A DNA stretch of 64,000 bases from IMGVR_UViG_3300042473_001265:248001-312000, one strand, 5' to 3'; positions 28,155 through 57,464 are shown, numbered from the stretch's first letter. Notes: generated from the letters alone by a model not told the origin. Numbers and translations are program-made.

Positions 28155-28184
28155 TATTTAGATTTGATCTAATTGCCCATCCGA

Positions 28185-28190
28185 TAAATA
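28185..28190 (+). promoter_or_regulatory. TAAATA late-promoter-like motif
   Basis: Upstream of the 28213-31866 operon. Confidence 0.55.
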
Positions 28191-28212: not shown

Positions 28213-28461
28213 ATGCAAAAGAAAACTAGAAGTTTGTTAGAAGAACTCGATTCAATGTACGTTGAGCGTGACAACCGCCATGTGATTGAAAACCGTGCCA
28301 GTAACATCATAGCCAGTGCCATACGCCTGCTAGAGCAGATTGACTCCATTTACGAGCCCGAAACTGCTAAGAATTTACAACGCAAATTGCTCAATGCCAT
28401 CAACCTGCGTGACCCAGGCAAATTTACCAGAACCGTGAGAAAAACTGATGCAAATTCATGA
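28213..28461 (+). CDS. Hypothetical protein
   Basis: 82 aa helical ORF after the late motif. Confidence 0.75.
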
Positions 28462-30001
28462 ACTGAGTCGTAGACGCCGCACAGACGAAGGTGTCTTTGA
28501 CGTCGTTAAAGGTATCGGTAAGGCCGCAGGTTCTGCTCTCGGGGCTGCCACCGGCGTCACCAATCCCAATGCACAAGCAGCCTCTGCAGGAATTCTTGAC
28601 CCTGCAAAAAAATTAGACGCAGTAAGAAAAAACAAGGACATGCAGAGAGTTGCTGCACAACTGGCCGCAGGATGGACTGCAGAAGCAACAAAACTAACTA
28701 AGGCACCAGCAGCTGGTGCAGCACCACTGCCCGAAGCAGTGGGCACATACAATAAAAAAACTGGCGCAGCAAATTTAGATGGTAAAACAATGACTTCATT
28801 GTCAGACTTGCCGCCTGCAATACAGCAACAGATACAAGCAAAACAACAAGCTGCTGTACCAGGCAGCGATGCTACACCAACATCTGCAGAACAAGATGCA
28901 GCCGATGCAAGAGTTGCAGCTTCTGGTGCAAGTCCCGAAGAAGTTGCAAAGCAACGAGCAGCTAGAGAACAAACAATAGCAGCCAGAACTTCGCGTACTG
29001 CACCAACGGTCAAAACAGCTGATCCATCCGTTGATCCAAGATTAAATCCAACTGCTAATCCAAGATTAAATCCAACTGCTAATCCGGCGATAAATCCAAC
29101 TGCTAATCCGGCGATAAATCCAACTGCTAATCCGGCGATAAATCCAACTGCTAATCCGGCTGCCGCAACAACAACACCAACTAAACCTGGCGCACCACCG
29201 GGATTCAATGCTGCCAATGTAATGAAGATGCCAGGCATGCAGCCGGCTGGTAAGAAACCTGCACCTGCCTCTGCTGCAACGACACCCAAGCCCGGTGCCC
29301 CTCCTGGATTCAATGCTGCCAATGTGATGAAGATGCCGGGCATGCCCGGACAACCTGCAACACCCGGGTCAATAACACCCGGAGCAGCAGGAGGTGGTGC
29401 TGGACAGCCCGACGCAGTAACACCGCCTGCTGACCCGGCAGAAAAAGAATATTGGAACAAGTTTTTAGCATATGTAAATAAAAAAACCGCCATTAGAGAT
29501 GCCAGCACTTATCAAATGATCGGGCTAGATCAAATTCAAAAGCAATCTGGATATAAAAATGAACTTGAAGCAGCCAAAGCCAAAATTTTACAAGCATACA
29601 AAGCCGGGCAAGATGTAACACCAGCAGCCACTGAATATATATTGACAGCAATGGCTGGCGCCCAACTGATATCTTCAAAAAATAGGGCCGGCGTGGAACT
29701 AGAACAGCCAGAAGTAGATCCAAACGATCCAGACGCTGCCGCAGGAGCCACAGGAGACAACGGTGCTGCCGCAGGCGGTGCAGCGCCTGGTACTGCGCCC
29801 GGTACTGCGCCCACTGCTGGTGGCAGAATTCTTGATACCGCAGGTGTACAAGGGCTATTCAAGTTGAACGGGGTTGATCCCGCACTGCTACCCAAACTTG
29901 GAACTGAATTAAGACGAGCCAGCGGAACCAACGCTGTGACCACAACTGGCAACGGCACAGTTGATAACATGCTGAAAGCATTGGGATTCAAAGTAACATG
30001 A
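28448..30001 (+). CDS. Ala/Pro/Gly-rich low-complexity protein, probable internal virion protein
   Basis: NPTANP repeats and a duplicated [18 protein letters not shown]; N-terminus MQIHE. Confidence 0.7.
29045..29161 (+). repeat. In-frame tandem repeat, 5 x 24 bp ([16 protein letters not shown])
   Basis: Units start at 29045, 29069, 29093, 29117, 29141. Confidence 0.95.
29183..29344 (+). repeat. Duplicated 19-codon motif [19 protein letters not shown]
   Basis: Copies at 29183-29239 and 29288-29344 with synonymous differences. Confidence 0.9.
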
Positions 30002-31866
30002 TATTAAAAGAAGGCGGCAATGTATTTAAAGATCAGAATGGTCGCATTCTGACTCAACGCATCAATCAAACAGACGTGAATCCCACCTTGGCCTGGTTGG
30101 AAATGCTGCTGCCGGGCCTGGATCTACAAAACAACAAACTGGGCTCAACTGGGCTAAAACCCACATCCGGTGACTTGGATATAGCAGTGGATGCCAATGT
30201 TGTCAGCAAAGACCAATTGGCTGCAAAACTGACTCAGTGGGCTCAGAGCCATGGTCTCAAACCCGAAGACTATGTGAAACGGTCCGGCATCAGTGTGCAT
30301 TTTAAAACGCCCATCAATGGAAGACCCACAATGGGCTATGTGCAAACTGACTTTATGTTTTTGACCAATGTGCCATTCTCCAAGTTTGCGCTGACAGCCG
30401 CTGCTGACAGCAAGTACGGCGGATCTGATCGCAATGTGCTGATCAACAGCATAGCCAAAAGCATGGGTTACAAACTGAATCAAACTTCGGGCATTGCCGA
30501 CCGCGCAACCAACAAAATTATCACAGATGATCCTGACAAGATTGCCAAGCTGTTGCTGAACAATCGTGCAACCAAAGAAGATTTGTACAGTGTAGAAACT
30601 ATTGTGGCTGCATTGGAACAGGATCCCAAGCGTGATGCCAAGTTGGCAGATGCTAGAGATCACTTTGCTAAAAAAGGTGTGCCTTTTATGGAAAGCGATG
30701 AACCAGTGTACAAAGAATACACCGAAGTGGATTTTCTTGCACGCCTGCGTGATCGTATTGTGAATCAAGGCATGCAGGTCATTGTGGAAGGTGCAAAGGA
30801 TGCCAGAATTGAACACTTAGAAGATCTAGTGTTTGAAAAAGGAACCCGGGGCATTCGTGAAGCAGTGGACATCATGCGACATGCTGCTGAAAATACTAGA
30901 GCAACTACCACTGTCAAGTGGGATGGAAAGCCCGCCATTATATTTGGACGCAAGCCTGACGGCACATTTGTGCTCACAGACAAAAGCGGATTCAGTGCCA
31001 AAGGCTACGACGGCTTGGCCACATCACCGGAGCATATTCAACAAATAATGGCCCTGCGCAAAGGTGACAGAACTGAACTGGTAGCTATCTATCAAAAGTT
31101 ATTTCCTCTGTTACGGGCTGCCACTCCGGAAAACATGCGCGGCTATGTGCAAGGCGATCTGTTGTACACCAACACTCCGCCCGAAGTTGCTGGCGCATTT
31201 GTGTTCCAACCAAACTTTGTTGAATACAAGATACCTGCTGGTAGTCAGCTGGGGCAGCGTATTGCTGCCAGCGAAGTGGGTGTTGCAATTCACACCAGAT
31301 ACAAAGATCCTGACAGTTCGCCTACTGCAATTAAAAACATCGCACTGGATCCTGTTCCAGGATTGTTGTTGATTGAACCCAGTGTCAAAGACATTCAAAA
31401 TATCGAACTCAATACTCAGTTGGTCAAGCAACTGAGTCAAATCATTTCTGTTCACGGCAAAGACATTGATGGATTGTTCAATCCTGCGGACCTTCGTTCA
31501 GCTGGTATCACTGACTTACCACAGTTATGCAAACGCTATATCAATTCTAGAATTACCAGCAACTACGACAACCTGCTGAATGGCTTTGGTGACTGGTTGC
31601 AGGCCAATGTGACACCACGCAAATTCAACAACATTGTGGAATATTTACAAAGCCCGCGATCCAACACCGACGGCATTACCGCAGCATTCGCAGCGTTCAT
31701 GTTGTTGCACGATATCAAAACTGACATGTTGACACAGTTGGATCGTCAGCAGCCAGGCCAGGAAGGCTGGGTACTAGCAACACCAGCAGGCCGCGCCAAA
31801 CTGGTGAATAGATTTGGATTCAGTGCAGGAAACCGTGCTCTAAACAACCCAGAACAAGCAGCCTAA
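29998..31866 (+). CDS. Two-domain nucleotidyltransferase: Pol-beta-superfamily NTase plus ATP-dependent ligase-like (KxDG) domain
   Basis: 'LGSTG....SGDLDIAVD' and 'VQTDF'; then 'TVKWDG', 'VQGDLLY', 'EGWVL', 'AKLVNR'. Confidence 0.6.
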
Positions 31867-31889
31867 CCGGTAATTTTTCTCCAAATACA

Positions 31890-31895
31890 TAAATA
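31890..31895 (+). promoter_or_regulatory. TAAATA late-promoter-like motif
   Basis: Followed by AGGAG SD and ATG 31938. Confidence 0.6.
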
Positions 31896-31937
31896 AAAGT
31901 AGGTCAACCAAGACCACATACTTTAGGAGATTTTAAA

Positions 31938-32315
31938 ATGGCAAATATCACAACAGCAACGAACGGCACATACCAACCAGTATCCAACATGGACTCTGGA
32001 ACAGTAGCATCTTCACCAGGTGCTGGTTATCCAACACCGTTAAACAGCGCAACCAGTGCTGTCACAGTTAACTTGGCTGGTCCAAAGTTAGACTTCTTCA
32101 CAATCACTTTGGCAAGTTTGGCCACTAGTGGCGCAGTTTTGAATGCATGTATGCTTGCCATTCAAACCAAGGCCACTATTGCCATGTACGAAGTCACTGA
32201 CGCTGGTACAGATACACTGGCTATTGCTGTGTATCCCACAGGCGCTTGGACCACTGCTACACTAGACACTGCCACTGGCGGTAGTACAGCAGCCACTGCA
32301 ACATTCACAAACTAA
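31938..32315 (+). CDS. Small Ala/Thr-rich probable abundant virion protein (head decoration-like)
   Basis: Monocistronic unit: late motif, AGGAG SD, terminator. Confidence 0.55.
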   Translation: MANITTATNGTYQPVSNMDSGTVASSPGAGYPTPLNSATSAVTVNLAGPKLDFFTITLASLATSGAVLNACMLAIQTKATIAMYEVTDAGTDTLAIAVYPTGAWTTATLDTATGGSTAATATFTN

Positions 32316-32333
32316 GCAATTAGTTTTTGATAC

Positions 32334-32367
32334 AAAAACCCTGGATTAAAACCCAGGGTTTTCTTTT
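32334..32367 (+). terminator. Rho-independent terminator
   Basis: AAAAA-CCCTGG-ATTAAAAC-CCAGGG-TTTTCTTTT. Confidence 0.85.
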
Positions 32368-32372
32368 GGCGT

Positions 32373-32378
32373 TAAATA
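32373..32378 (+). promoter_or_regulatory. TAAATA late-promoter-like motif, leaderless arrangement
   Basis: 7 nt before ATG 32386, no SD. Confidence 0.55.
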
Positions 32379-32385
32379 CTTCATT

Positions 32386-32640
32386 ATGATGGTGAGCAAG
32401 ATTACCGAAGTGACGATATTTGAAAGTCCAGATGGCGGCCGGACAGTGTATGCACGTCACCCAGGCGCACAGAATCGGTCACTGCATTATCAAGATCCCA
32501 AACTAAAACAAGAACTAGATGAATTAGAACACAAGCGCCGCTGGGCAGAAATATTTGAATCCCGGCACAACAATGTAGCACTCAATGAACTGTGCAGTAA
32601 AGTTGAAGTGCTGTATGAATTGAGTAAAAAGAACAAATGA
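32386..32640 (+). CDS. Hypothetical protein
   Basis: 'TIFESPDGGRTVYAR'; late motif. Confidence 0.75.
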   Translation: MMVSKITEVTIFESPDGGRTVYARHPGAQNRSLHYQDPKLKQELDELEHKRRWAEIFESRHNNVALNELCSKVEVLYELSKKNK

Positions 32641-33077
32641 AATATGCAGTACAAACTTTCTTTGACATAACAGCCACTGGAATTACAGGACATTTTAAAC
32701 CGTCAAGGATTCCGTTTCGCGACAATGCAGGAAATATGATAACCGATGCAGAATCCTGGAATCGTGCTAGAAATCAACAACGCAACTGGGAAACCGTAAC
32801 ACAGATTCTTGGACTAAGAACTCAGCTGTTCCGCCTGCAAGATCCCATAGTAGACACATCACGCAGTGCATGGATGTTTGAATTCGAAACAGAATCTGAC
32901 AACATATACGGCAATGATGTTGATCCCACCAGCATATTGAGAGCCGATGCGGATGGTGTGCCCATGCTGACCGGACTGGATAACAAGCACGAATTGGCAT
33001 CGACCATTGTCACTCAGGGCCCGGCTCAGAATATTTGGTTTGTTCCGGTCTCCATAAATAGATCAACGGAGACTTAA
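32637..33077 (+). CDS. Hypothetical protein
   Basis: 146 aa, ATGA-coupled. Confidence 0.75.
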   Translation: MKYAVQTFFDITATGITGHFKPSRIPFRDNAGNMITDAESWNRARNQQRNWETVTQILGLRTQLFRLQDPIVDTSRSAWMFEFETESDNIYGNDVDPTSILRADADGVPMLTGLDNKHELASTIVTQGPAQNIWFVPVSINRSTET

Positions 33078-33341
33078 ATGGTTGATACTACCAATATTGA
33101 AAAGAAAAGTTTAGAAGCACATGTGGAACTGTGTGCTGAACGCTACAGTGCGTTGGAATCAAGATTGGATAATGTAGATTCTAAAATTTCTCAGCTTGAA
33201 AAAATCATTTGTGAAGTGCGCGACATGGTACAGTCCATGGCCGAAAAACGCAATGATCAATTGATCAACTGGGGCATAGGTACCATTGGTACACTAGTTG
33301 CTGTGGTTGGGTACCTTATTACACAATACGTTCTTAAATGA
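33078..33341 (+). CDS. Coiled-coil protein with C-terminal transmembrane helix (XhlA/holin-like architecture)
   Basis: Heptad region followed by 'WGIGTIGTLVAVVGYLI'; TAAATA at 33055-60 and GGAG SD. Confidence 0.65.
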   Translation: MVDTTNIEKKSLEAHVELCAERYSALESRLDNVDSKISQLEKIICEVRDMVQSMAEKRNDQLINWGIGTIGTLVAVVGYLITQYVLK

Positions 33342-33835
33342 CCCTAGACACACAATTTGAACGCCTGTTTAAAACTGAGTTTGCGGCGCTACAGTCCAAC
33401 AGTCTTTGGAAAAATGATGCTGGAGAATACCAAGTATTTGGGCGTTATCGCATTGTGAAAGAATCAGCAGGCTACAGAGTATACTGTTCTCTAACTGAAG
33501 TTGGGCTTTTTCACAGCACAAGAGCAGCACTGAGCTGGTGTATTGCCGACAAGTTTGCGCGGTATAACACAGCCAGGGATATACTACAGCTGGACAATAA
33601 TTTACATTTTTTAACAGTGGATATCAACACCAGAGCTGCCCTGGGTGATCGTGCAAAAACTGCTGATCAGCATGAAATTATACTGACCAAGCTGGAAAGT
33701 AAAATTATACAGAAAAAAGAGATAGAAAATAGGTTAGACATTTGTGTCAACTGGGCTAAATATTATCAACAACAAGGATTCGACAATGAAACTGCAAGAC
33801 CTGGCCGTGCTGCCACAAACAAAACAAATCGCTAA
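33338..33835 (+). CDS. Hypothetical protein
   Basis: 165 aa, ATGA-coupled. Confidence 0.7.
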   Translation: MTLDTQFERLFKTEFAALQSNSLWKNDAGEYQVFGRYRIVKESAGYRVYCSLTEVGLFHSTRAALSWCIADKFARYNTARDILQLDNNLHFLTVDINTRAALGDRAKTADQHEIILTKLESKIIQKKEIENRLDICVNWAKYYQQQGFDNETARPGRAATNKTNR

Positions 33836-34655
33836 AGTATTCGAAAGTTACTTTGGTAATACCATTACCTTTGAATCAATTTCCAAGCGCCATGCACATG
33901 CCATGTTGGGCCGAGTACGCAGCTTGATAAGCGAGCACCGTGCCACCACTTCCTATCATGGCAGTGAAAAAAGCCCAGCCTACTTAAAGTTGGTAATGAT
34001 GGAACAAGTGCTGACCAAGAAACTTCGTGAAGAATTTCCAAGCACTGATGGCACTGCTGCGGTTGATCCAGCCAAGACCAAACAGGCCCTGGCCAAAATT
34101 CAAGATCCCAAACTCAAAGCTGCCATGACCAAAAGCGCAGCCGGACAGACACTTTCACCAGACGAACAAAAACTTGTGCAAGGTGCAGCACTGCAAGCAG
34201 TGGCCGCAGAAAGCCGTCGTAGAACTGGTCGCCGTTTGAGTGAAAGCGAAGTGCAACAAGCTCAGGTTATCCTGGCCAGTCAAGACATGGTTGACCAAGT
34301 ACAGAAGATGATTGAACAGGTCACTTCGTTACAATTTAAAGATTTGCCTGCGTTGGTAGATCAGATTCGCAATGAAATTGGCTACGAGCAAGCAACAAAA
34401 TTCAATGCCGACGCAACTGCTGCACTGGGCGGCATGGTTCAAAACTTGCAGGGCTCCAAAACACAATTGGAAGCTGCAATGGGCACAGTCACTGGTCAAG
34501 CTCCAGTAATACCCGGCGGCGATGTAGCTGCTGAATTACCAGTTGATCCAATGGCTGATCCAATGGCTGCTGCGCCAGCAGATGATTTAGACATCGATGT
34601 TGATGCAGACATTGAAGAACCAGTTTCGGCTGGTCTAGGTCGCGATCGCAGATAA
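33786..34655 (+). CDS. Helical protein with acidic tail, putative prohead core/scaffold-like protein
   Basis: TAAATA 33757-62, AAGGA SD, start MKLQDL; internal L-x-E sites; D/E/A/P-rich C-terminus. Confidence 0.55.
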   Translation: MKLQDLAVLPQTKQIAKVFESYFGNTITFESISKRHAHAMLGRVRSLISEHRATTSYHGSEKSPAYLKLVMMEQVLTKKLREEFPSTDGTAAVDPAKTKQALAKIQDPKLKAAMTKSAAGQTLSPDEQKLVQGAALQAVAAESRRRTGRRLSESEVQQAQVILASQDMVDQVQKMIEQVTSLQFKDLPALVDQIRNEIGYEQATKFNADATAALGGMVQNLQGSKTQLEAAMGTVTGQAPVIPGGDVAAELPVDPMADPMAAAPADDLDIDVDADIEEPVSAGLGRDRR

Positions 34656-34996
34656 TGCGTTTACGAGAGTTCGCTGAAGATCAAGCTGATGGTCAAAAAC
34701 TTGCGGCATTGGCCACCTTTCTCAGCGACCGAGCCAATGACGAAGCAGCAGCAAAACAAATTAGCAAAAAAACATTCATCGAACTTGCCCGCTCTGTGGG
34801 TGTCAATGTAAACGACACCAATCTCAATGACATGGTTGCTGCTGAACCACTCAGCAACATCCTCAACCCAATTGATACTGGTTCAGACATAATCAGTTTC
34901 AAAGGCGACACAGAAGCTGCCACCGGCATGAGTGTTGATCAAGCTCAAGAAGTGGTCAACAGCAATGCCAAGTCGGCAATGAAACGCCGTCAGTAA
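34655..34996 (+). CDS. Hypothetical protein, probable head-associated
   Basis: TAATG-coupled; N-terminus MRLREF. Confidence 0.7.
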   Translation: MRLREFAEDQADGQKLAALATFLSDRANDEAAAKQISKKTFIELARSVGVNVNDTNLNDMVAAEPLSNILNPIDTGSDIISFKGDTEAATGMSVDQAQEVVNSNAKSAMKRRQ

Positions 34997-35121
34997 CACA
35001 CTCAAAATCGCAGTATACTCAAAAGACTAGTAAATACACTGAGAGTGTAGTATACTATACGCATAGCTATTATTACGATAGCTGTAAATTCAACAATTTA
35101 ATACAACAGGAAATTTTTTAA

Positions 35122-35325
35122 ATGGCATCAGGTAAAGTAAAATGGTTTAATGAAACCAAAGGTTTTGGGTTTATTACTCCAGACGCAGGCGGAGAAGAAC
35201 TGTTCGCACACTACACAGCAATTCAAACAGATGGATTCAAGGTCCTCAAAGAAAATCAGCGTGTATCTTACGATGTAGTTCAAGGACAAAAAGGCCTGCA
35301 AGCATCTAACATTGTGCCACAGTAA
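35122..35325 (+). CDS. cspA: Cold-shock protein (CspA family)
   Basis: 'GKVKWFN', RNP1 'KGFGFI', RNP2 'LFAHY', 'KGLQASN'. Confidence 0.97.
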
Positions 35326-35335
35326 ATCGCAACAG

Positions 35336-35357
35336 GCCGGGTTACTCCGGCTTTTTT
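35336..35357 (+). terminator. Rho-independent terminator
   Basis: GCCGG-GTTACT-CCGGC-TTTTTT. Confidence 0.85.
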
Positions 35358-35381
35358 ATCAAATTATAAAACAATCAACAT

Positions 35382-35765
35382 ATGGCCTATTCAGAAAAAG
35401 TAGTTGATCATTATGAGAACCCAAGAAATGTAGGCAGCTTTGCCAAAGAAGATGGTGATGTCGGCACAGGCATGGTCGGGGCTCCGGCCTGCGGCGATGT
35501 GATGAAGCTGCAAATCAAAGTCACCGACGGAGTAATCACAGATGCAAGATTTAAAACATACGGTTGCGGCAGCGCGATTGCGTCAAGTTCGCTTGTTACT
35601 GAATGGGTCAAAGGACTCACCCTTGAGCAGGCGGAAACGATCAAAAATAGCGAAATTGCTACTGAGCTTGCCCTTCCCCCTGTTAAAATTCATTGTTCAA
35701 TACTTGCAGAAGATGCCATCAAAGCGGCGGTAGCTGACTATAGAATCAAGCATCCAGCGCAATGA
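35382..35765 (+). CDS. iscU: Fe-S cluster scaffold protein IscU
   Basis: 'DHYENPRNVG', 'GAPACGDVM', 'KTYGCGSAIASSS', 'LPPVKIHCS'. Confidence 0.97.
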   Translation: MAYSEKVVDHYENPRNVGSFAKEDGDVGTGMVGAPACGDVMKLQIKVTDGVITDARFKTYGCGSAIASSSLVTEWVKGLTLEQAETIKNSEIATELALPPVKIHCSILAEDAIKAAVADYRIKHPAQ

Positions 35766-36085
35766 TCGAAGTCACTGACACTGCTGCTAAAAAAATTAAA
35801 AAAAGTTTAGCCGCTCGCGGTCGCGGTGAAGGCATCCAAATTGGTGTACGAACCACTGGTTGTTCGGGACTTGCTTATGTGTTAGAATATGTAGACAATC
35901 CCAATTTGCATTGTGTACGACATTACGATTCAAATGGTGTACGGGTGTTCATTGATCCCAAACACCTGCCGTACTTGGATGGCATGATAGTAGATTTCAA
36001 AAGGAACGGCCTCAACGAAGGTTTTGAGTTTATCAACAAAAACGAGCGCGACCGCTGCGGTTGCGGAGAATCATTCAGAGTTTAG
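35762..36085 (+). CDS. iscA: Fe-S cluster carrier protein IscA
   Basis: 'GVRTTGCSGLAY', 'CGCGESF'. Confidence 0.95.
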   Translation: MIEVTDTAAKKIKKSLAARGRGEGIQIGVRTTGCSGLAYVLEYVDNPNLHCVRHYDSNGVRVFIDPKHLPYLDGMIVDFKRNGLNEGFEFINKNERDRCGCGESFRV

Positions 36086-37714
36086 ATGAGAGTAAAATTT
36101 TGTTCGCATAGTCTGACACAACTAATCAAGCATGAAAAAGTCAGTGTAAATCCTGCATGGCTCTACATGCAAAAATGGTACGAACTGCATGGAAAAAATC
36201 CCAATGTAAAATGGTTGCTTCCTGGGATTGTATTATTAGATCCAATGGATGTTGTAATTGATAAAATTGTGCAAGAACAACCTGATATTTTGGGTCTTGG
36301 ATTCTATGTTTGGAACTTTGACTTGCAATATCACATTGCCAGAGAAGTTAAAAAACAATTACCAGATATAATTATAGTCTGCGGCGGTCCGCAACTATCG
36401 GTACACAAAGAAACAGAGACTGACAACCAAGTTGATTTTTTCATCAACCATCCGTATATAGACTATGTAGTGTACGGCGACGGCGAACGACCATTTCAGC
36501 AAATTATTGATTATCATTCCGGGCTCCTGTTCAATAAAGACGAGTTTGTTAACATTATTGAAAATGCCAATGGGGTAAGAAAAATATATCCGCACGAAAC
36601 GTTGACAGATGAACTTTACCTAAGTCAAAGTCCTTATGTGAGTCAAGAAGCTCATATGGCCGAAGTGCGTGATCATCTGGCAGCTTACGGAATTCCAATC
36701 GAAGACCAATACTGGGCTATTGAATTTGCCCGAGGATGTATGTATAGTTGTACATTTTGTGATTGGTCACAAAATTTAACTAAAAAAGTCAAACGTCGTA
36801 CACACAACTGGAAACACGATATTGATTTGTTCCATCGACTAAATGTGGCCATACGAGAAACAGATGCCAACTTTGGACAATGGCCAGATGACATAAAAGC
36901 GTTTGATTATGCAATTTCTTTATATGATCCTGCTCGTAGTTTTTCTTTTATAGTGAACAACACTCCCAAACTCAAGAAAGATGTAACCGAGTATATTATT
37001 ACTCAAAATAGTCTTGTGTATGATGTTCCGCCTGTGATCAATCTTCAAGATGCCGATGAAGATGTATTAAAGGCAATCGATCGTCCAGCAGTTCCGTGGG
37101 AAGCTATTGTTAAAATGACAAACAATCTAAGAAATAACTTACCGCCTGAAAAATTTCGCAAGACAGAACTGCAATGCATACTAGGGTTACCGGGGCAAAC
37201 AGTTGACAGTCTAATTAATTCTTATGTTAAGTTTTTTGAATTGGGCTTGTTAAGAGCTTCATGGGCCAATTGGTCATTTTTACCAAACAGTCCAGCAGCT
37301 GATCCTGCTTATCAAAGATTCTGGGGGCTTGATATCAAGGAAGTGTACTTTGCATTTGAGTCTCATGTGGTGCCAGATCTTGGGGAACTATACAGCGAGT
37401 TAGCGTCTGGCAACAGTTTGTCAGACAAATTTTATAAGCTACCAATGGTGGTTGGTCATAAAACAATGAAAATGTTAGATTTATGGACTGCTCAAATACT
37501 AGCAAAAAAATGGAACGAGTTGACTAGTCGTGTAGATCTAGTAGAAAAATACAATAGTTCTCAGGTAAGAAACATACTGGGTAAATTAAAAACACACGCA
37601 ATAAAAGAAGCAACAACACAATATGACATACATCAACACCATATCAACCAGCATGGTATTGTTGTATGGGGTCATTACCAAACTGAATCAAAACTCATAC
37701 ACAAAAATCTTTAA
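36086..37714 (+). CDS. B12-binding-domain radical SAM protein
   Basis: 'PDILGLGFYVWN', 'IVCGGPQ', 'VVYGDGE', 'EFARGCMYSCTFCDW', 'ILGLPGQT'. Confidence 0.88.
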   Translation: MRVKFCSHSLTQLIKHEKVSVNPAWLYMQKWYELHGKNPNVKWLLPGIVLLDPMDVVIDKIVQEQPDILGLGFYVWNFDLQYHIAREVKKQLPDIIIVCGGPQLSVHKETETDNQVDFFINHPYIDYVVYGDGERPFQQIIDYHSGLLFNKDEFVNIIENANGVRKIYPHETLTDELYLSQSPYVSQEAHMAEVRDHLAAYGIPIEDQYWAIEFARGCMYSCTFCDWSQNLTKKVKRRTHNWKHDIDLFHRLNVAIRETDANFGQWPDDIKAFDYAISLYDPARSFSFIVNNTPKLKKDVTEYIITQNSLVYDVPPVINLQDADEDVLKAIDRPAVPWEAIVKMTNNLRNNLPPEKFRKTELQCILGLPGQTVDSLINSYVKFFELGLLRASWANWSFLPNSPAADPAYQRFWGLDIKEVYFAFESHVVPDLGELYSELASGNSLSDKFYKLPMVVGHKTMKMLDLWTAQILAKKWNELTSRVDLVEKYNSSQVRNILGKLKTHAIKEATTQYDIHQHHINQHGIVVWGHYQTESKLIHKNL

Positions 37715-37717
37715 CCA

Positions 37718-38434: not shown

Positions 38435-38452
38435 CAACAGAGGACAACTAAA

Positions 38453-40036
38453 TTGGCTATTGTACAAATTTCGCGAATTACCCAGCGTAAAGGGTTACAA
38501 GAAGATCTACCGCAATTGGCAGGCGCTGAATTGGGATGGAGTATCGACGAACGCAGATTGTTCATTGGTAACGGAACATTGGAAGAAGGTGCTCCAGTAA
38601 TTGGTAATACAGAAATTCTCACTGAATTTTCTGACTTATTGTATCTGGTGCAAGATTATGTATATTCGGGCCAAGAAGCCACCGGATACACAGTACAAAC
38701 AGGTGCAACACCCGGAACTCCGGTTCAACTGTCCTTGCAAAACTGGATGGATCAATTTGCCACAGTCAAAGACTTTGGTGCAGTTGGCAACGGTGTTGCT
38801 GACGACACTGCGGCCATTAACCGCGCACTTTATCAATTGTACTGTAGAGAAGTGAATCCTGCAATTCGTAGAAGTTTATTCTTTCCAGCTGGCATTTACA
38901 AAGTTTCAGGCACTATTGTTATTCCACCCTATGCCACACTGATTGGCGAAGGCCCCAAGAACAGTATTATTCAACTGACAGCAACTGCCACAGCAGTTTA
39001 CACAATGCAGACTGGCGACAGCCTACAACAGACCGGTGTCAACATTGGCACCAATGGCGCTCAACCTCCAATAAGTGTCACATGTGAAAATATGGCCTTT
39101 GCCAGTCTCAAAGCAACAGATGTTGCATGTATAGAACAGGCAACTGAATTTGTGTTTAATCAGGTTGAATTCCTTGGACCATTGACCACTGTTGATTTGA
39201 CATCGGCTGTGGCCGATATTTCGTGTGTTAAATTTATCAGTACTGCTGCCAATGACACGCATCAGATCAAGTTTGACAACTGTACATTCTCCGGCTGTAC
39301 CTATGGCATGCGAACAGATCAGCAGGTGCGTGGTATTGACTTTACTGGATCACATTTCTCCACACTGTTCGAAGGCATACTGGTTGAGCCAAACCCCCTG
39401 GGTTCTGCCTATGACCCGCGTGGTATTGGCATACAAAGTTGCGACTTTGATACTATCTATGCTCGCGGCATTGTGTTTGAAGTGGAACGCAATGCCACTG
39501 CACAAAATACATTCGGTGATGTCGGCAACCACTTTGGTGGTGTCACACAGCCCTACACTGCCATTATTGATTTTGTATCGCCCAACAACATCAGCGTTGG
39601 CGATATTTTTGATCGACCAGACCAATATGCCACACTGTATCCCAGAGTTGATTTGAATGGCACTGCCAGCATTGCGTTTACCAATGGTCAACAGTTGGCC
39701 ATGGGTCCGTATGTGCGAGAATCTGGCCTCACAGCAACATTGAACAACAATGTAACTTCGCCCACTGCTGCTTTTTCTTACAGTGAACTTGACACCTGGT
39801 CACTCAACATTGATTACAGCATTTCTAGAAGCACTGCATATAGAACTGGCAGAATTACTGTTGTTTTATTTGACGGCGCCGGTGCGCTAACATACACTGA
39901 TGATTTTTCTGAAAATACTTCTACTGGCATCACGCTGACAGTGTCACAGACCGGTAATGAAATTTTTGTAAACTACGTCAGCACAAATACCGGCACCGGT
40001 GGATCGATAACCTACAGCATAAACCATATACATTGA
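38453..40036 (+). CDS. Tailspike/tail-fibre protein (Mtd_N-like N-terminus, pectate-lyase-like beta-helix)
   Basis: 'GAELGWSIDERRLFIGNG', 'TVKDFGAVGNGVADDTAAI', 'FFPAGIYKV'. Confidence 0.8.
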   Translation: MAIVQISRITQRKGLQEDLPQLAGAELGWSIDERRLFIGNGTLEEGAPVIGNTEILTEFSDLLYLVQDYVYSGQEATGYTVQTGATPGTPVQLSLQNWMDQFATVKDFGAVGNGVADDTAAINRALYQLYCREVNPAIRRSLFFPAGIYKVSGTIVIPPYATLIGEGPKNSIIQLTATATAVYTMQTGDSLQQTGVNIGTNGAQPPISVTCENMAFASLKATDVACIEQATEFVFNQVEFLGPLTTVDLTSAVADISCVKFISTAANDTHQIKFDNCTFSGCTYGMRTDQQVRGIDFTGSHFSTLFEGILVEPNPLGSAYDPRGIGIQSCDFDTIYARGIVFEVERNATAQNTFGDVGNHFGGVTQPYTAIIDFVSPNNISVGDIFDRPDQYATLYPRVDLNGTASIAFTNGQQLAMGPYVRESGLTATLNNNVTSPTAAFSYSELDTWSLNIDYSISRSTAYRTGRITVVLFDGAGALTYTDDFSENTSTGITLTVSQTGNEIFVNYVSTNTGTGGSITYSINHIH

Positions 40037-40461: not shown

Positions 40462-40478
40462 AATAACAAGAGAAGTAA

Positions 40479-42797
40479 ATGTCAACAATCAATGTAGTAA
40501 AACGAAGCGGTCGGCGCGAGATCATGGCCATCGAAAAATGGCAAACCCAAGTAGCAAAAGTGTGCCAAGGCATAGCAGATGTCAGCCAAAGTATGGTGGA
40601 GATCAAAGCACAATTGCATTTCTACGATGGTATCACCACCAAAGAAATTGACGGTATCACACTTAGAGCTATTGTGGATTTGATCGATGTTGAATCAAAT
40701 CCTGATGTGGGCCATACCAACTATCAATATGTGGCCGGCAAACAAAGACTTAGCATGTTGAGAAAAGATGTGTACGGCAGCTATGATGTGCCATCACTGT
40801 ACACGATTGTAAAAAAGAATGTGGCCACTGGCCTGTACACTCCTGAGCTGCTGGAATGGTACACTGAAGATGATTGGAACCGAATGGATTCTTTCATTGA
40901 CCACAGCAAAGATGAACTGTATGGTTATGCAGCCATTGAACAGCTGATTGAAAAATATCTAGTTAAAAATCGTTCAACAGGACAAATTTATGAAACTCCA
41001 CAAATTAGATACATGGTCGCGGCCGCTACTGTATTTCACTCAGAAGAACCGAACACAGCGAGAATGCGCTTCATCAAAGAATACTACAACGCTGCCAGTG
41101 ATGGGCTATTTACTCTTGCTACTCCTGTTCTTGCTGGGCTTGGTACTCCTACGAAACAATTTTCATCTTGCGTTCTTATTAGATCAGATGATGATTTGGA
41201 TAGTATTTTCGCGTCTGGTGAAATGATGGCCAAGTATGCCAGCAAGCGAGCTGGCATTGGATTAGAGATTGGTAGATTGCGTCCACTAGGTTCGCCCATT
41301 CGTGGTGGTGAGATCATGCACACAGGTATGATACCATTCTTGAAGAAATGGTTTGGAGATTTGCGTAGTTGTAGTCAAGGAGGTATTCGTAATGCTAGTG
41401 CTACTGTGTTTTACCCTATTTGGCATCATCAATTTGATGATCTTATTGTACTCAAGAACAATCAAGGGACTGAAGAGACCCGAGTTCGACACATGGATTA
41501 TGGAGTCGTATTGTCAGCATTCTTCTGGAGACGATTTAAAAACAAAGAAGACATAACATTCTTTGATCCTAACGAAGTGCCCGACTTGTATCAAGCGTTC
41601 TATAGTAATACAGAACTATTCGAAGAACTTTATGTAAAGTATGAAAAGCAATCTGGCCTGCGTAAGAAAACTATGAGTGCTGAAGAAGTATTTAAATCAG
41701 GCATCTTGAAGGAGCGCACAGACACTGGACGCATCTATCTAGTGTTCATTGACAATGTGATGAAGCAAGGACCGTTTGATCCTGAATACCACACCATTTA
41801 CCAAAGTAACCTTTGTTGTGAAATACTTTTACCTACTCGTTCTTTTAAGCGTCTCGATGATGCTGATGGGCGCATCGCTTTATGCACTCTTGGTTCAATT
41901 AATTGGGGTGCCTTCCGTAATCCTGAAGATATGCGCAGGGCTTGTCGCATTCTACATAGAAGCCTCAATAATATACTGGACTATCAAGATTTCCTATCAA
42001 TTCAGTCGAAGTTGAGCAACGATGAAATCAGACCACTGGGAATTGGTATCACCAATCTTGCCTACTGGCATGCCAAGCGTAGTTTGAAATATGGTGAGAA
42101 GGATGCTCTGGCAGAAGTCAAAACTTGGATGGAACATCAGACATATTATCTAACTGAGATGAGTGTTGAACTGGCTGAGGAGCGAGGCCGATGTGAAGGC
42201 AGTGATCACACACGCTATGGCCAAGGACAGTTTCCCTGGGAACTTCGTGCAGTAGGAGTCAATGAACTGACTGATTTTACCCCGGAACTTGAATGGGAAA
42301 CACTTCGTGCTAGAATGAAAGTGAGTGGCGTTCGTAATGCTACTAATGGAGCAATTGCTCCTGTTGAATCCAGTTCGGTGGCCATCAACTCAACCAACGG
42401 CATTGAAATGCCCATGAGCCTGATCACTGTGAAAGAAAGCAAGGCCGGCAGTTTGATTCAAGTGGCGCCCGAATACAACCGGTTGAAAAACAAATATCAA
42501 CTGATGTGGGCACAAAAAGATTGTGATGGCTACTTGAAAACAGCCGCAGTACTAGCTGCCTATGTGGACCAAAGCATCAGTACCAACACATTCTACAATC
42601 CTGCACACTTTGCAGATCGTAAGGTACCAACAACTCTAATTGCTCGGAACTTGATGCAGTCGCACTACTGGGGTCTAAAAACTTTCTACTACAGCCTGAT
42701 CAACAAAGCAGGTAGCAAAGGTCAAGACGAAGTTGTTGCACCATTGGAAGCGATTGAGTTTGATGATCAAGAAGATTGCGAGGCATGCAAGCTCTAG
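40479..42797 (+). CDS. nrdA: Ribonucleotide reductase class Ia alpha subunit with ATP-cone
   Basis: 'VVKRSG', 'FSSCVL', 'NLCCEI', 'IAPVESS', 'KTFYY', C-terminal 'CEAC'. Confidence 0.97.
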   Translation: MSTINVVKRSGRREIMAIEKWQTQVAKVCQGIADVSQSMVEIKAQLHFYDGITTKEIDGITLRAIVDLIDVESNPDVGHTNYQYVAGKQRLSMLRKDVYGSYDVPSLYTIVKKNVATGLYTPELLEWYTEDDWNRMDSFIDHSKDELYGYAAIEQLIEKYLVKNRSTGQIYETPQIRYMVAAATVFHSEEPNTARMRFIKEYYNAASDGLFTLATPVLAGLGTPTKQFSSCVLIRSDDDLDSIFASGEMMAKYASKRAGIGLEIGRLRPLGSPIRGGEIMHTGMIPFLKKWFGDLRSCSQGGIRNASATVFYPIWHHQFDDLIVLKNNQGTEETRVRHMDYGVVLSAFFWRRFKNKEDITFFDPNEVPDLYQAFYSNTELFEELYVKYEKQSGLRKKTMSAEEVFKSGILKERTDTGRIYLVFIDNVMKQGPFDPEYHTIYQSNLCCEILLPTRSFKRLDDADGRIALCTLGSINWGAFRNPEDMRRACRILHRSLNNILDYQDFLSIQSKLSNDEIRPLGIGITNLAYWHAKRSLKYGEKDALAEVKTWMEHQTYYLTEMSVELAEERGRCEGSDHTRYGQGQFPWELRAVGVNELTDFTPELEWETLRARMKVSGVRNATNGAIAPVESSSVAINSTNGIEMPMSLITVKESKAGSLIQVAPEYNRLKNKYQLMWAQKDCDGYLKTAAVLAAYVDQSISTNTFYNPAHFADRKVPTTLIARNLMQSHYWGLKTFYYSLINKAGSKGQDEVVAPLEAIEFDDQEDCEACKL

Positions 42798-42808
42798 CAT
42801 GAAATGGT

Positions 42809-43306
42809 ATGAAAATAAATGAACTGTTAGAAAGTGCAGATGACATAGAGTTCAAGGCAAAAACTCTTGCTGTTGATGCACACAAGAACCAAAAATACGG
42901 TGTACACCCTTATGTCACTCATTTGGCGGATGTTGTTGCCCGTGTTAAAACAATTACACAAGACCCGGAAATAATTGCTGCTGCTTGGTTGCATGATATA
43001 GTGGAAGATACAGATGTTACCTTAGAACAAATCAAACAACAATTTGGTGATAATGTTGCCAATATAGTTTGGGCAGTGACAGGACGCGGAGAGAACCGAA
43101 AAGAAAAAATGGCAAATGCCATTGCCAAGATTGCTCAAACTCCGGGAAGTGAATTGGTAAAGAGTGCAGACCGATTGAGCAATGTTTCTGCCAGTTTAGC
43201 AAACAATCCAAAAAAACTTAAAATGTACCGAGATGAACACAAGGATTTGAGTCCAGTCTTGGGCAATAATGCATTGGCTTTAGAGCTAGTGGATTTATTT
43301 AAATAA
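42809..43306 (+). CDS. HD-domain hydrolase, Mesh1/SpoT-type small alarmone hydrolase-like
   Basis: 'AHKNQKY...PYVTHL..V', 'AAWLHDIVEDT', 'FGDNVA.IV..VT', 'VKSADRLSN'. Confidence 0.85.
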   Translation: MKINELLESADDIEFKAKTLAVDAHKNQKYGVHPYVTHLADVVARVKTITQDPEIIAAAWLHDIVEDTDVTLEQIKQQFGDNVANIVWAVTGRGENRKEKMANAIAKIAQTPGSELVKSADRLSNVSASLANNPKKLKMYRDEHKDLSPVLGNNALALELVDLFK

Positions 43307-57424: not shown

Positions 57425-57429
57425 ATTTA

Positions 57430-57460
57430 TTGACAGATGTTGAGATATCTGTTATAAATA
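57430..57460 (+). promoter_or_regulatory. Overlapping sigma70-like (TTGACA-17-TATAAA) and late (TATAAATA) promoters
   Basis: TTGACA 57430-35, TATAAATA 57453-60. Confidence 0.7.
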
Positions 57461-57464
57461 ATCG

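What the first reader, a model, noticed from the sequence alone, without database searches (positions are those of the whole stretch)
28448..43306. Shared N-terminal M-x-(I/L)-x-E tag marks a putative set of head-packaged, injected proteins, including enzymes
Starts: MQIHEL (28448), MILKEG (29998), MKLQDL (33786, D variant), MRLREF (34655), MKINELLES (42809). Internal (I/L)-x-E sites fall at domain boundaries (LPE|A, IVE|G, LRE|E, LSE|S). In T4, internal proteins carry an N-terminal capsid-targeting sequence (MKTYQEFIAE) and gp21 cleaves after (I/L)-x-E. Inference: the ppGpp-hydrolase-like protein and the dual nucleotidyltransferase are packaged, matured and injected with the DNA, forming a first-strike anti-defence payload.
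Basis: inference. Interest (0 to 1): 0.75.

Follow-up and report, generated by a model that had tools for sequence, protein, structure and literature searches.

The report
Capsid-targeting tags in a jumbo phage
A 340-kb uncultivated phage puts a short, conserved N-terminal tag, very like the one phage T4 uses to load proteins into its head, on about 15-20 unrelated proteins including enzymes, which predicts which proteins are packed with the DNA and injected, though no experiment yet shows this.

Summary
The five N-termini are exactly as described, and the pattern is not chance. Genome-wide the real motif is M-[KRNQI]-[ALIT]-x-E-[FLI], often followed by a second (L/I/V/F)-x-E at residues 8-11. 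It occurs on 20 of 410 genes (3.5-8 expected; 0 of 20,000 permutations reach 20). Ten of them lie in one cluster outside the window. It matches T4's targeting peptides (ipII/III MKTYQEFIAE, gp24 MAKINELLRE) with the register one residue shorter.

The phage is a RaK2/PA5oct-like jumbo phage with a gp21-family prohead protease. Its scaffold-slot protein has the highest (L/I)-x-E density in the genome. Tagged proteins share nothing but the tag. Orthologues keep the tag through synonymous codon turnover. The window block 28213-34996 lies behind T4-late-like promoters and is syntenic with PA5oct proteins detected in virions.

The HD protein is a RelA/SpoT-type hydrolase. Its tag is kept in about 100 homologues, but its packaging is the least supported claim. 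ORF 29998 is a PolX-like plus ligase-like fusion with an atypical tag.

Packaging, cleavage, injection and any anti-defence role remain inferences.

The parts
28184..28190 (+). ATAAATA, a motif like the T4 late promoter, 22 nt upstream of ORF 28213; heads the operon 28213-31866
   Evidence: 32 of the 50 genomic copies lie within 80 nt upstream of gene starts, many of them head and tail genes
28213..28461 (+). 82-aa protein of a 'virion structural protein' family; untagged; first gene of the late operon
   Evidence: phrog_11854, E 7e-16; homologue of the PA5oct 79-aa gene at 148394
28448..30001 (+). 517-aa Ala/Pro-rich low-complexity protein with tag MQIHEL (nt 28448-28465); predicted internal head protein
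   Evidence: Orthologues keep MQIHEL although the rest is only 32-63% identical. Same position as PA5oct gp226/gp227, both found in virions by MS. No family hit
29998..31866 (+). 622-aa two-domain enzyme: PolX-like nucleotidyltransferase (residues 8-232) plus ligase-like DUF6267 (271-616, invariant KWDG). N-terminus MILKE|GGN is an atypical tag
   Evidence: Pfam DUF6267, E 1e-37. AF2 model. Pol beta Z 9.6 for residues 11-194, RNA/DNA ligases Z 6-7 for 266-617. [LI]-x-E-GGN is kept in 17 orthologues even where the N-terminus is longer. The N-domain is homologous to PA5oct gp231, found by MS
30781..30789 (+). IVE262-264, a candidate protease site in the interdomain linker of the 29998 protein
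   Evidence: E264 is invariant, with variable insertions directly after it. It lies in the linker 233-270, pLDDT below 50
33054..33060 (+). ATAAATA late-promoter-like motif upstream of ORF 33078; heads the operon 33078-34996
33338..33835 (+). 165-aa conserved protein. In this genome the start is degenerate (MTLDTQFE), but many orthologues start MK.DQEFER, which is the T4 register (E6, F7)
   Evidence: 79 orthologues of conserved length
33786..34655 (+). 289-aa protein with tag MKLQDLA (nt 33786-33806); the C-terminal domain belongs to a virion structural protein family
   Evidence: phrog_14154, E 1e-11. In 48 distinct orthologues M-K-L-x-[E 32 / D 16]-L-A is invariant. Homologue of PA5oct gp237 (starts MFLKDV, found by MS)
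34023..34031 (+). LRE80-82, a candidate protease site at the end of the conserved N-terminal block of the 33786 protein
   Evidence: [LIVM]-x-E in 44 of 48 orthologues; a variable, indel-rich linker begins at residue 83
34236..34244 (+). LSE151-153, a candidate protease site at the start of the conserved C-terminal domain of the 33786 protein
   Evidence: L in 46/48, P2 variable, E and the following S invariant
34655..34996 (+). 113-aa protein with two-part tag MRLREFAE|D (nt 34655-34678)
   Evidence: Over the 32 distinct orthologue N-terminal DNA sequences, E5 is invariant (GAA 16, GAG 16), R2 uses 5 codons, position 6 is F or V, position 8 is E or D, and positions 9-10 are hypervariable. Same position as PA5oct gp238 (MKIKDILVE|S, found by MS)
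42809..43306 (+). 165-aa HD_4 (RelA/SpoT-type) small-alarmone-hydrolase-like protein with tag MKINELLE|S (nt 42809-42832), inserted between nrdA and nrdB
   Evidence: HD_4, E 1e-14. Rel/SAH/Mesh1/(p)ppApp hydrolase structures match from residue 16. The tag is kept in about 100 homologues of 60-96% identity and is almost the T4 gp24 propeptide MAKINELLRE|S. Phage homologues of other lineages mostly align from about residue 10-20 on

Best explanation
The window belongs to a RaK2/PA5oct-like jumbo myovirus with a T4-type head-assembly module (portal, small core protein, gp21-family protease, scaffold, gp23-type capsid protein).

About 15-20 otherwise unrelated proteins of this phage carry an N-terminal peptide M-[KR..]-[LIA]-x-E-[FLI]-(x)1-4-[LIVF]-x-E. 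I interpret it as the counterpart of the T4 capsid-targeting sequence. The first half (hydrophobic residue at 3, E5, hydrophobic residue at 6; compare T4 Y4, E6, F7) docks the protein onto the scaffolding core as the prohead forms. The prohead protease then cuts after the second Glu, and at further (L/I/V)-x-E sites in exposed linkers such as IVE264 of the 29998 protein and LRE82/LSE153 of the 33786 protein. This leaves the mature proteins inside the head, to leave with the DNA at infection.

In the window this applies with good support to 28448, 33786 and 34655. It applies probably to 29998, which is likely a virion protein although its tag is atypical. It applies plausibly to the HD (p)ppGpp-hydrolase-like protein 42809.

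Shown: the motif, its excess, its clustering, its conservation, the protease and scaffold context, late-promoter motifs, and synteny with virion proteins of PA5oct.

Inferred: targeting, cleavage, injection and any counter-defence function.
For: 1. Excess and clustering. E5+[FLI]6 occurs on 20 of 410 genes, against 3.5-8.0 expected, and 0 of 20,000 permutations reach 20. Ten lie in one 22-gene stretch (0 of 20,000 random placements). The strict two-part motif occurs on 9 genes against 0.8 expected. A second [LIVFM]-x-E at residues 8-11 is found in 9 of 20 tagged against 31 of 390 untagged genes (P 2.5e-5).

2. Tagged proteins share no similarity beyond the tag.

3. Likeness to T4 peptides read from the T4 record: MRAREFIAE|Q here against T4 MKTYQEFIAE|A, and MKINELLE|S against T4 gp24 MAKINELLRE|S.

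4. Machinery. There is a Peptidase_S77 hit (E 9e-25) and a Gp23 hit (E 8e-99). The scaffold-slot protein has 15 (L/I)-x-E sites against 3.4 expected, the highest density in the genome (P 3e-6). The protease itself has 7 against 2.0.

5. Conservation. Orthologue tags are kept down to 41-51% identity with synonymous codon turnover, and the residues just after the tag are hypervariable. A relative has four consecutive tagged genes.

6. Virion link. The 73-aa tagged protein between portal and protease is homologous to PA5oct gp150 (starts MKINDIITE, found by MS). 33786 is homologous to gp237 (MS). The 29998 N-domain is homologous to gp231 (MS). 34655 is syntenic with gp238 (MS). In PA5oct the relaxed two-part motif occurs in 7 of 92 MS proteins against 5 of 249 others (P 0.02).

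7. ATAAATA late-type motifs head the operons at 28213 and 33078 and many head and tail genes. Relatives' HD genes have TAAATA 7-10 nt upstream.

8. RaK2-like phages phAPEC6 and 121Q contain a proteinaceous inner body of unknown composition (PMC7247149).
Against: - No proteomic or N-terminal data exist for this phage.
- The PA5oct association is weak under strict, pre-defined motifs (5/92 against 6/249, P 0.15; two-part 2/92 against 2/247, P 0.30). It reaches P 0.008-0.02 only with patterns widened after seeing the data.
- The PA5oct MS list also contains obvious non-structural enzymes such as RNR, so it is noisy.
- The register is one residue shorter than in T4.
- 11 of the 20 tags lack a second site within residues 8-11, including 28448.
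- The window copy of 33786 has D at position 5. In T4 an Asp at the cleavage position blocks processing.
- The HD gene lies in a nucleotide-metabolism operon with no late motif within 400 nt upstream and has no PA5oct homologue.
- At least one match (window 48845, MNIQEIN) looks like a false positive, because in a relative the same residues are internal.
- Internal (L/I)-x-E sites in the window proteins are not more numerous than chance.
Confidence: 0.65

Rival explanations
1. Chance or compositional bias: N-termini are rich in K, I, N, E and L because of A/T-rich early codons, so M-x-[IL]-x-E arises without any function.
For: K, N and I are enriched at positions 2-3 of all genes. Single matches such as window 48845 and perhaps 29998 may be chance.
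Against: 0 of 20,000 permutations that keep positional composition reach the observed 20. The excess is specific to E5-[FLI]6 (20 genes, against 2-6 for E-[FLI] at most other positions). The tags are strongly clustered, correlate with a second site, and are conserved in orthologues while neighbouring residues vary.
Confidence: 0.03
2. The motif is an mRNA-level signal (translation initiation or coupling, or a recombination linker as in the T-even IP locus), not a peptide signal.
For: Many tagged genes start at overlapping stop/start junctions in operons. GAA dominates at codon 5 in this genome.
Against: Across orthologues R2 is written with 5 codons, L3 with 4 plus Ile codons, and E5 with GAA and GAG equally, so selection acts on the amino acids. 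Tags of different genes differ at the DNA level.
Confidence: 0.04
3. The peptide is real but serves another purpose: for example a degron or adaptor signal for the Clp-type proteases that these jumbo phages encode, a chaperone handle, or a signal for assembly into tail or baseplate rather than the head.
For: PA5oct encodes ClpX, ClpA, ClpP and ClpS. Cutting after E5 would expose F or L, which are classical bacterial N-degron residues (established knowledge; inference). Some tagged genes sit in replication or metabolism contexts (the 327-aa protein after the DNA polymerase; the HD gene).
Against: The close likeness to T4 head propeptides, the tagged orthologue pair in the gp67/68 slot next to the protease, the scaffold's site density and the co-occurring second (L/I/V)-x-E all point to the head protease.
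Confidence: 0.15
4. The proteins are head components cut by the protease, but the N-terminal peptide is only a cleavage site or propeptide, not a sufficient targeting signal. Loading would then depend on the body of each protein.
For: In phiKZ-like phages long propeptides, not 10-residue tags, are associated with loading (PMC5694885). The 33786 protein seems to have a propeptide of about 82-153 residues bounded by conserved sites.
Against: The same short peptide sits on about 20 unrelated proteins, including enzymes whose homologues elsewhere lack it. That is the pattern expected of a portable signal, as shown for T4 (PMC9026906).
Confidence: 0.12

Closest known systems
T4 capsid targeting sequence of internal proteins IPI, IPII and IPIII (Mullaney and Black 1996; reviewed in PMC9026906, PMC3012670)
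   Same: A short N-terminal peptide shared by otherwise unrelated proteins. The pattern is M-basic-x-hydrophobic-x-E-F/L ... (I/L)-x-E (one tag here ends EFIAE, as in T4). The phage has a gp21-family protease and a scaffold core. The cargo includes counter-defence candidates.
   Different: The register is one residue shorter (E5/hydrophobic 6 against E6/F7). There are about 20 cargo genes instead of about 3-5, scattered and in a 10-gene array. The cargo includes enzymes of up to 1,466 aa. The lineage is different (RaK2/PA5oct-like jumbo phages). Function here is untested.
T4 gp24 vertex-protein propeptide (MAKINELLRE|S)
   Same: Nearly the same residues as the HD protein's start MKINELLE|S.
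   Different: gp24 is a shell protein paralogous to gp23. The protein here is an HD_4 hydrolase.
Propeptides of inner-body and ejection proteins of phiKZ, 201phi2-1 and SPN3US (cut at S/A-x-E by a gp21-related protease)
   Same: Jumbo phages with a large mass of internal head proteins that are processed after Glu. Redundant sites occur in exposed linkers, like LRE82/LSE153 and IVE264 here.
   Different: Those propeptides are mostly over 100 residues long and the site motif is S/A-x-E. Here there is a short T4-like tag and the scaffold is rich in L/I-x-E.
Polyvalent proteins and injected effectors of phages (Iyer et al. 2017, PMC5512222), and the P1 Dar system
   Same: Large multidomain enzymes (nucleotidyltransferase, zincin peptidase, amidoligase; LysM) predicted to be packed in the head and injected. 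Genome 56241-60584 and 66378-70778 fit this description.
   Different: Those are usually recognised by MuF or portal fusions or by gene neighbourhood. Here a common N-terminal tag marks them, and marks single-domain genes that match different parts of multidomain PHROG families (phrog_727, phrog_3477).
Inner body of RaK2-like coliphages phAPEC6 and 121Q (PMC7247149)
   Same: Same phage clade by capsid protein (about 62-66% identity to cultured RaK2/PA5oct-like phages). A protein cylinder lies inside the head and its components are unknown.
   Different: That is only a structural observation. No link to any sequence signal has been made.

Membership tests
T4-type capsid-targeting / gp21-cleaved N-terminal propeptide | The phage encodes a gp21-family prohead protease with a scaffold and a gp23-type capsid protein | tested here: met
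   PF03420, E 9e-25, at genome 197443-197898. PF07068, E 8e-99. Gene order portal, 73-aa protein, 253-aa protein, protease, scaffold, capsid protein as in PA5oct and T4.
T4-type capsid-targeting / gp21-cleaved N-terminal propeptide | An N-terminal peptide of 10-20 residues resembling MKTYQEFIAE / MAKINELLRE, shared by unrelated proteins | tested here: met
   20 genes carry M...E[FLI]. They show no BLASTP similarity to each other. The register is one residue shorter than in T4.
T4-type capsid-targeting / gp21-cleaved N-terminal propeptide | The peptide ends in an (L/I)-x-E cleavage site | tested here: inconclusive
   A second [LIVFM]-x-E at residues 8-11 occurs in 9 of 20 tags, including 34655 and 42809. 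28448 and 33786 have only the first site, and the window copy of 33786 has D there.
T4-type capsid-targeting / gp21-cleaved N-terminal propeptide | The protease of this phage cuts at (L/I)-x-E | tested here: inconclusive
   Indirect only: the scaffold-slot protein has 15 sites against 3.4 expected, the top density in the genome. The fold of protease with tag peptide gave no verdict.
T4-type capsid-targeting / gp21-cleaved N-terminal propeptide | The tagged proteins are present in virions | tested here: inconclusive
   Homologues or syntenic counterparts in PA5oct (gp150, gp231, gp237, gp238) carry the ESI-MS/MS note. Genome-wide enrichment in PA5oct is P 0.02-0.3 depending on the pattern. There are no data for this phage or for the HD protein.
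T4-type capsid-targeting / gp21-cleaved N-terminal propeptide | The tag is sufficient to load a foreign protein and is removed in mature heads | not testable with these tools
   Needs fusion experiments and N-terminal proteomics.
Small alarmone hydrolase (RelA/SpoT HD_4 hydrolase domain) | HD_4 domain above the curated cut-off, with the HD metal-binding motif | tested here: met
   PF13328, 55 bits against a cut-off of 27.2. The sequence LHDIVEDT is present. Rel, Mesh1, SAH and (p)ppApp hydrolase chains match at E 1e-14 to 4e-5.
Small alarmone hydrolase (RelA/SpoT HD_4 hydrolase domain) | Hydrolysis of (p)ppGpp or (p)ppApp | not testable with these tools
   Needs an enzyme assay.
Pol X-type nucleotidyltransferase fused to an ATP-dependent ligase-like domain (DUF6267) | Pol-beta fold with the G-S ... 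D-x-D motif in the N-domain; ligase adenylyltransferase fold with the K-x-D-G motif in the C-domain | tested here: met
   Pol beta Z 9.6 and AsfvPolX Z 8.1 over residues 11-200. G49 S50 ... D59 D61 are invariant. RNA and DNA ligases score Z 5.4-7.2 over 259-622. K307 W308 D309 G310 are invariant. The ligase Z values are middling, so that fold assignment rests partly on the motif.
Polyvalent proteins (Iyer et al. 2017) | A large protein combining several effector-type enzyme domains, encoded by a phage | tested here: met
   Genome 56241-60584 (L006:241-4584): NTP_transf_2, SprT/M48/M78-like peptidase, amidoligase (weak to moderate Pfam and PHROG hits). This gene lies outside the window.

The most novel reading that the evidence does not exclude
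The tag is a portable head-loading address used throughout a widespread clade of RaK2/PA5oct-like jumbo phages (563 IMG/VR relatives of one cargo gene alone). It would then name the so-far unidentified inner-body and ejection proteins of these phages. In this genome that is about 15-20 proteins, including two polyvalent enzymes of about 1,450 aa, a PolX-ligase nucleic-acid repair enzyme and a (p)ppGpp hydrolase. All would be delivered with the DNA as a pre-made first wave against host stress and defence responses.
Probability: 0.4. Interest if true: 0.8.

Novelty: new variant of a known kind. Interest (0 to 1): 0.65.

Why it matters
- If the tag works as in T4, a simple sequence rule predicts the injected protein cargo of a large, mostly uncultivated group of jumbo phages.
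- It gives candidates for the unidentified inner body seen in phAPEC6 and 121Q.
- It points to injected enzymes (alarmone hydrolase, PolX-ligase, polyvalent proteins) as early counter-measures.
- It offers a ready-made handle for loading foreign proteins into jumbo-phage heads.
- It is directly testable in PA5oct, which carries the same kind of tag on proteins already detected in its virions.

Tried and rejected
- Megablast of the region against cultured phages found no match. tblastn of the 28448 protein also found none.
- The 28448 and 34655 proteins have no hit in Pfam, PHROGs or NCBIfam.
- A PDB sequence search with the 29998 protein found nothing. Only the fold search placed its domains.
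- The complex prediction of the prohead protease with residues 1-40 of the 34655 protein scored 0.01 and gave no verdict. It is not evidence either way.
- The PA5oct supplementary tables are not held. I used the ESI-MS/MS notes in the GenBank record instead.
- Enrichment of the strict motif among PA5oct virion proteins is not significant. Only patterns widened after seeing the data reach P 0.008-0.02.
- I tested whether the window proteins are rich or poor in internal (L/I)-x-E sites. They are neither.
- Literature searches for capsid-targeting tags in RaK2/PA5oct-like phages found nothing. The library is incomplete, so this is not proof of novelty.


Full report
**What the window is.** The window is bases 248001-312000 of a 340,172-bp viral contig from IMG/VR. 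The contig is 98% complete, linear, and 44.6% G+C. It has no close DNA relative among cultured phages. It encodes a gp21-family prohead protease (Peptidase_S77, E 9e-25, genome 197443-197898) and a gp23-type major capsid protein (E 8e-99). The capsid protein is 62-66% identical to those of Vibrio phage 2.275.O, Pseudomonas phage PA5oct, Serratia phage BF and other RaK2/PA5oct-like jumbo myoviruses. The head module has the order portal, 73-aa protein, 253-aa protein, protease, 366-aa scaffold-slot protein, capsid protein. This is the same order as in PA5oct and as T4 genes 20-67-68-21-22-23.

**Checking the observation.** No gene finder was available, so I wrote a simple one using hexamer coding potential, a Shine-Dalgarno score and a start-codon score. 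It genes covering 91% of the genome. On PA5oct it chose the annotated start for 88 of the 92 proteins checked. Expected numbers are 3.0 from overall composition, 4.5 from the rate after internal Met, and 5.3 from positional composition, giving P 0.0003-0.02. So the motif is more than chance, but only moderately so as defined.

**The real motif.** Listing the hits showed that 9 of the 11 also have F, L or I at position 6. A cluster at genome 56-75 kb (locus L006) starts gene after gene in the same way:
- MNILEL, MRALEF, MRASEL, MKTKEF, MRLYEF
- MKAKEI, MRAAEF, MILNEL, MRASEF, MKLSEL

Position 3 can be A or T. E at position 5 followed by F/L/I occurs on 20 genes. At most other N-terminal positions the same dipeptide occurs on 2-6 genes. 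The higher counts at position 7, which holds a four-copy paralogue family starting MNERIxEL, and at position 12 are not tags. Expected numbers are 3.5-8.0. None of 20,000 permutations that keep the composition of each position reached 20 (maximum 17). Ten of the 20 lie in one stretch of 22 genes (0 of 20,000 random placements). The tagged proteins have no BLASTP similarity to each other. Nine of the 20 have a second [LIVFM]-x-E ending at residues 8-11, against 31 of 390 untagged genes (odds ratio 9.5, P 2.5e-5). The strict two-part motif occurs 9 times against 0.8 expected. In the window the refined motif fits 28448, 34655 and 42809. ORF 33786 is a D variant. ORF 29998 (MILKEG) lacks the hydrophobic sixth residue. 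A further match at 48845 is probably spurious, because in a relative the same residues are internal.

**Likeness to T4.** I read the T4 sequences from the T4 record rather than from memory.
- ipII and ipIII start MKTYQEFIAE|A.
- ipI starts MKTFKEFTST.
- The vertex protein gp24 starts MAKINELLRE|S.

The tags here are the same kind of peptide, one residue shorter before the Glu.
- MRAREFIAE|Q (genome 234527) ends in the T4 pentapeptide EFIAE.
- The HD protein's MKINELLE|S is almost the gp24 propeptide.

According to the review of Black's work, targeting in T4 depends mainly on residues 4 and 7 of the tag and processing on residues 8 and 10. An Asp at position 10 blocks processing but not targeting (PMC9026906). 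By that alignment, positions 3 and 6 here would be the targeting residues, and the second Glu, not E5, would be the usual cleavage point.

**Is the protease likely to have the T4 specificity?** The protein in the scaffold slot (genome 198048-199148) has 15 (L/I)-x-E sites where 3.4 are expected. This is the highest density of all 410 proteins (P 3e-6). The protease itself has 7 against 2.0. This is what is expected if the scaffold is chopped up at such sites, as T4 gp22 is, but it is indirect evidence. A predicted complex of the protease with the first 40 residues of the 34655 protein gave no verdict.

**Conservation.** One scan of IMG/VR with the 33786 protein found 563 relatives, and 80 loci were kept.
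- In 48 distinct orthologues of 33786 (51-100% identity) the start is M-K-L-x-[E in 32, D in 16]-L-A. These residues are invariant while positions 8-10 vary. The window's Asp is therefore a minority form of a Glu tag.
- Over the 32 distinct N-terminal DNA sequences of 34655 orthologues, the tag reads M-[R/L/K]-[L/I/F]-x-E-[F/V]-[A/V]-[E/D]. E5 is invariant and written GAA and GAG equally. Arg2 is written with five codons. Positions 9-10 are hypervariable. This is selection on the peptide, not on the RNA.
- Orthologues of 28448 keep MQIHEL although the rest is only 32-63% identical.
- Untagged neighbours (28213, 31938) show no such pattern.
- The HD protein has about 120 listed homologues of 60-96% identity from metagenomes, some on contigs of 345-360 kb. 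Nearly all start M-K-[I/M/A]-x-E-[L/I/V]-x-E-S.
- In two relatives the HD gene sits in quite different neighbourhoods yet keeps the tag. One of them has four consecutive tagged genes just upstream: MKITEIIVEN, MKSHEFIKED, MRIHELFEN, MRYHELFES.
- HD homologues in cultured phages of other lineages mostly align only from about residue 10-20 on. Solved Rel, SAH and Mesh1 structures align from residue 16. So the tag lies outside the conserved catalytic core.

**Link to virions.** The PA5oct record marks 93 proteins found in virions by ESI-MS/MS (PMC7318152).
- The tagged 73-aa protein between portal and protease is homologous to PA5oct gp150 (73 aa, MS-positive, starts MKINDIITE).
- 33786 is homologous to gp237 (MS-positive, starts MFLKDVKITE).
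- The N-domain of 29998 is homologous to gp231 (MS-positive, starts MSGNAF without the extra residues).
- 34655 occupies the position of gp238 (MS-positive, starts MKIKDILVE|S).
- The window block 28213-34996, upstream of the exonuclease and the RNR genes, is syntenic with the PA5oct gp225-239 block of 'structural proteins'.

Genome-wide in PA5oct the association is only suggestive. The strict motif occurs in 5 of 92 MS proteins against 6 of 249 others (P 0.15). The strict two-part motif gives 2/92 against 2/247 (P 0.30). Patterns widened after seeing the data give 8/92 against 5/249 (P 0.008) and 7/92 against 5/249 (P 0.02). The MS list also holds RNR and other enzymes, so it is not clean. 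PHROG families for 28213, 33786 and the 253-aa head-module protein are named 'virion structural protein'. Cryo-EM of the RaK2-like phage phAPEC6 (and 121Q) shows an inner body, a protein cylinder inside the head, whose components are unknown (PMC7247149). Internal head proteins are therefore expected in this clade.

**Timing.** The heptamer ATAAATA, which is the core of the T4 late promoter TATAAATA, occurs 50 times in the genome. Thirty-two of the copies lie within 80 nt upstream of gene starts, many of them head and tail genes. In the window it precedes 28213, 31938 and 33078, that is, the operons that contain 28448/29998 and 33786/34655. The HD gene has no such motif within 400 nt upstream and starts 12 nt after nrdA. 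In two relatives TAAATA lies 7-10 nt before the HD start.

**The enzymes.** ORF 42809 is an HD_4 domain protein with the LHDIVEDT motif. It is related to Rel/SpoT hydrolase domains, Mesh1, bacterial small alarmone hydrolases and a (p)ppApp hydrolase.

ORF 29998 was folded with 17 orthologues (mean pLDDT 77.6). Residues 8-232 and 271-616 form two domains joined by a low-confidence linker (233-270), and residues 1-7 are also disordered. The first domain matches the palm-thumb of family X polymerases (Pol beta Z 9.6, ASFV PolX Z 8.1) and has an invariant G-S...D-x-D. The second domain (Pfam DUF6267) matches RNA and DNA ligase adenylyltransferase domains (Z 5.4-7.2) and has an invariant K-W-D-G. 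'Dual nucleotidyltransferase' is therefore supported, and a gap-filling plus nick-sealing repair enzyme is the natural guess (inference).

Outside the window, two tagged proteins of 1,447 and 1,466 aa carry nucleotidyltransferase, zincin-peptidase, amidoligase and LysM hits. They look like the polyvalent proteins that Iyer et al. proposed to be injected (PMC5512222). Several small tagged genes beside them match different segments of multidomain PHROG families. It looks as though a polyvalent protein had been split into separately tagged genes.

**Internal sites.** The window proteins do not have more (L/I)-x-E sites than chance, so the count proves nothing. The positions are suggestive.
- In 29998, E264 is invariant, lies in the disordered linker seven residues before the second domain, and is followed by variable insertions in diverged orthologues.
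- In 33786, [LIVM]-x-E82 (44 of 48) ends the conserved N-terminal block. L-x-E153-S (E and S invariant, P2 free) begins the conserved C-terminal domain. Between them lies a variable linker with insertions of up to 25 columns.
- LPE96 of 28448 could not be assessed, because too few full-length orthologues were available.

**Conclusion.** The best explanation is a T4-type capsid-targeting and propeptide tag, used by a whole clade of jumbo phages on a large and enzyme-rich cargo (confidence about 0.65).
- The set as a whole is not chance and not an RNA signal.
- Another role for the peptide, or a role as a mere cleavage site, cannot be excluded without experiments.
- Among the five window proteins, 28448, 33786 and 34655 are well supported as head proteins.
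- 29998 is probably a virion protein, but with an atypical N-terminus.
- The HD hydrolase has a textbook tag that is strongly conserved, but no virion or timing evidence in this genome.
- The 'first-strike anti-defence payload' idea is a reasonable inference and nothing more.

I found no description of such tags in RaK2/PA5oct-like phages in the searchable literature.

Noticed in passing
genome 56241-75289 (L006:241-19289), outside the window: An array of 10-11 consecutive or near-consecutive tagged genes just upstream of and around the DNA polymerase. It includes two giant proteins (1,447 aa: nucleotidyltransferase + zincin peptidase + amidoligase; 1,466 aa: LysM). It also holds small genes that match separate segments of multidomain PHROG families 727 and 3477, as if a polyvalent protein were split into separately tagged pieces.
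   Followed up: partly
window 28184, 31889, 33054 (also 11274, 12016, 54453, 57454, 59566) and genome-wide: ATAAATA (T4 late-promoter core) is concentrated upstream of genes: 32 of 50 copies. There appear to be two spacing classes, about 4-6 nt and about 17-27 nt from the ATG. The short class would give nearly leaderless mRNAs.
   Followed up: partly
window 35122-37714: A cold-shock protein (CSD, E 8e-28), a NifU-like scaffold (E 3e-51), an IscA/HesB-like Fe-S carrier (E 8e-17) and a B12-binding radical SAM enzyme lie in a row inside the phage. This looks like an Fe-S supply set for the phage's many radical SAM paralogues.
   Followed up: no
genome 139044-147621, 181672, 187565, 237067, 247447; window 26410-27438: A family of about ten paralogous 340-510-aa proteins related to the protein at genome 142850 (BLASTP E 1e-5 to 1e-81). 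I did not annotate them.
   Followed up: no
genome 121989, 332324, 333095, 335211: Four small paralogues (71-81 aa) all start MNERI-x-EL. This is a different conserved N-terminus and causes the secondary peak of E at position 7.
   Followed up: no
window 33338-33835: A conserved 165-aa gene that my gene caller dropped. It overlaps the start of 33786 by 50 nt. Many orthologues start MK.DQEFER, the exact T4 register (E6, F7), while the window copy has MTLDTQFE.
   Followed up: partly
window 28448-30001 (residues 200-231 and 247-299): The 517-aa tagged protein contains four tandem NPTANP(A/R)(I/L) octapeptides and a duplicated 18-residue [18 protein letters not shown] block. It has only 2 (L/I)-x-E sites against 4.8 expected.
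   Followed up: no
window 38453-40036: A 527-aa pectate-lyase-like beta-helix protein (tail spike or fibre PHROG hits) with a TTG start sits between the exonuclease and the RNR genes. Only its first ~40 residues resemble PA5oct gp241, a virion protein.
   Followed up: no
window 42809-43306 and loci L026, L028: The tagged HD gene is mobile within the clade. Here it lies between nrdA and nrdB. In one relative it lies next to NadR-like/NUDIX and NAMPT genes. In another it lies among peroxiredoxin, glycosyltransferase and ligase genes.
   Followed up: partly
genome 153279-167726, minus strand: A 4,815-aa ORF, comparable in size to the 3,857-aa virion protein gp128 of PA5oct.
   Followed up: no
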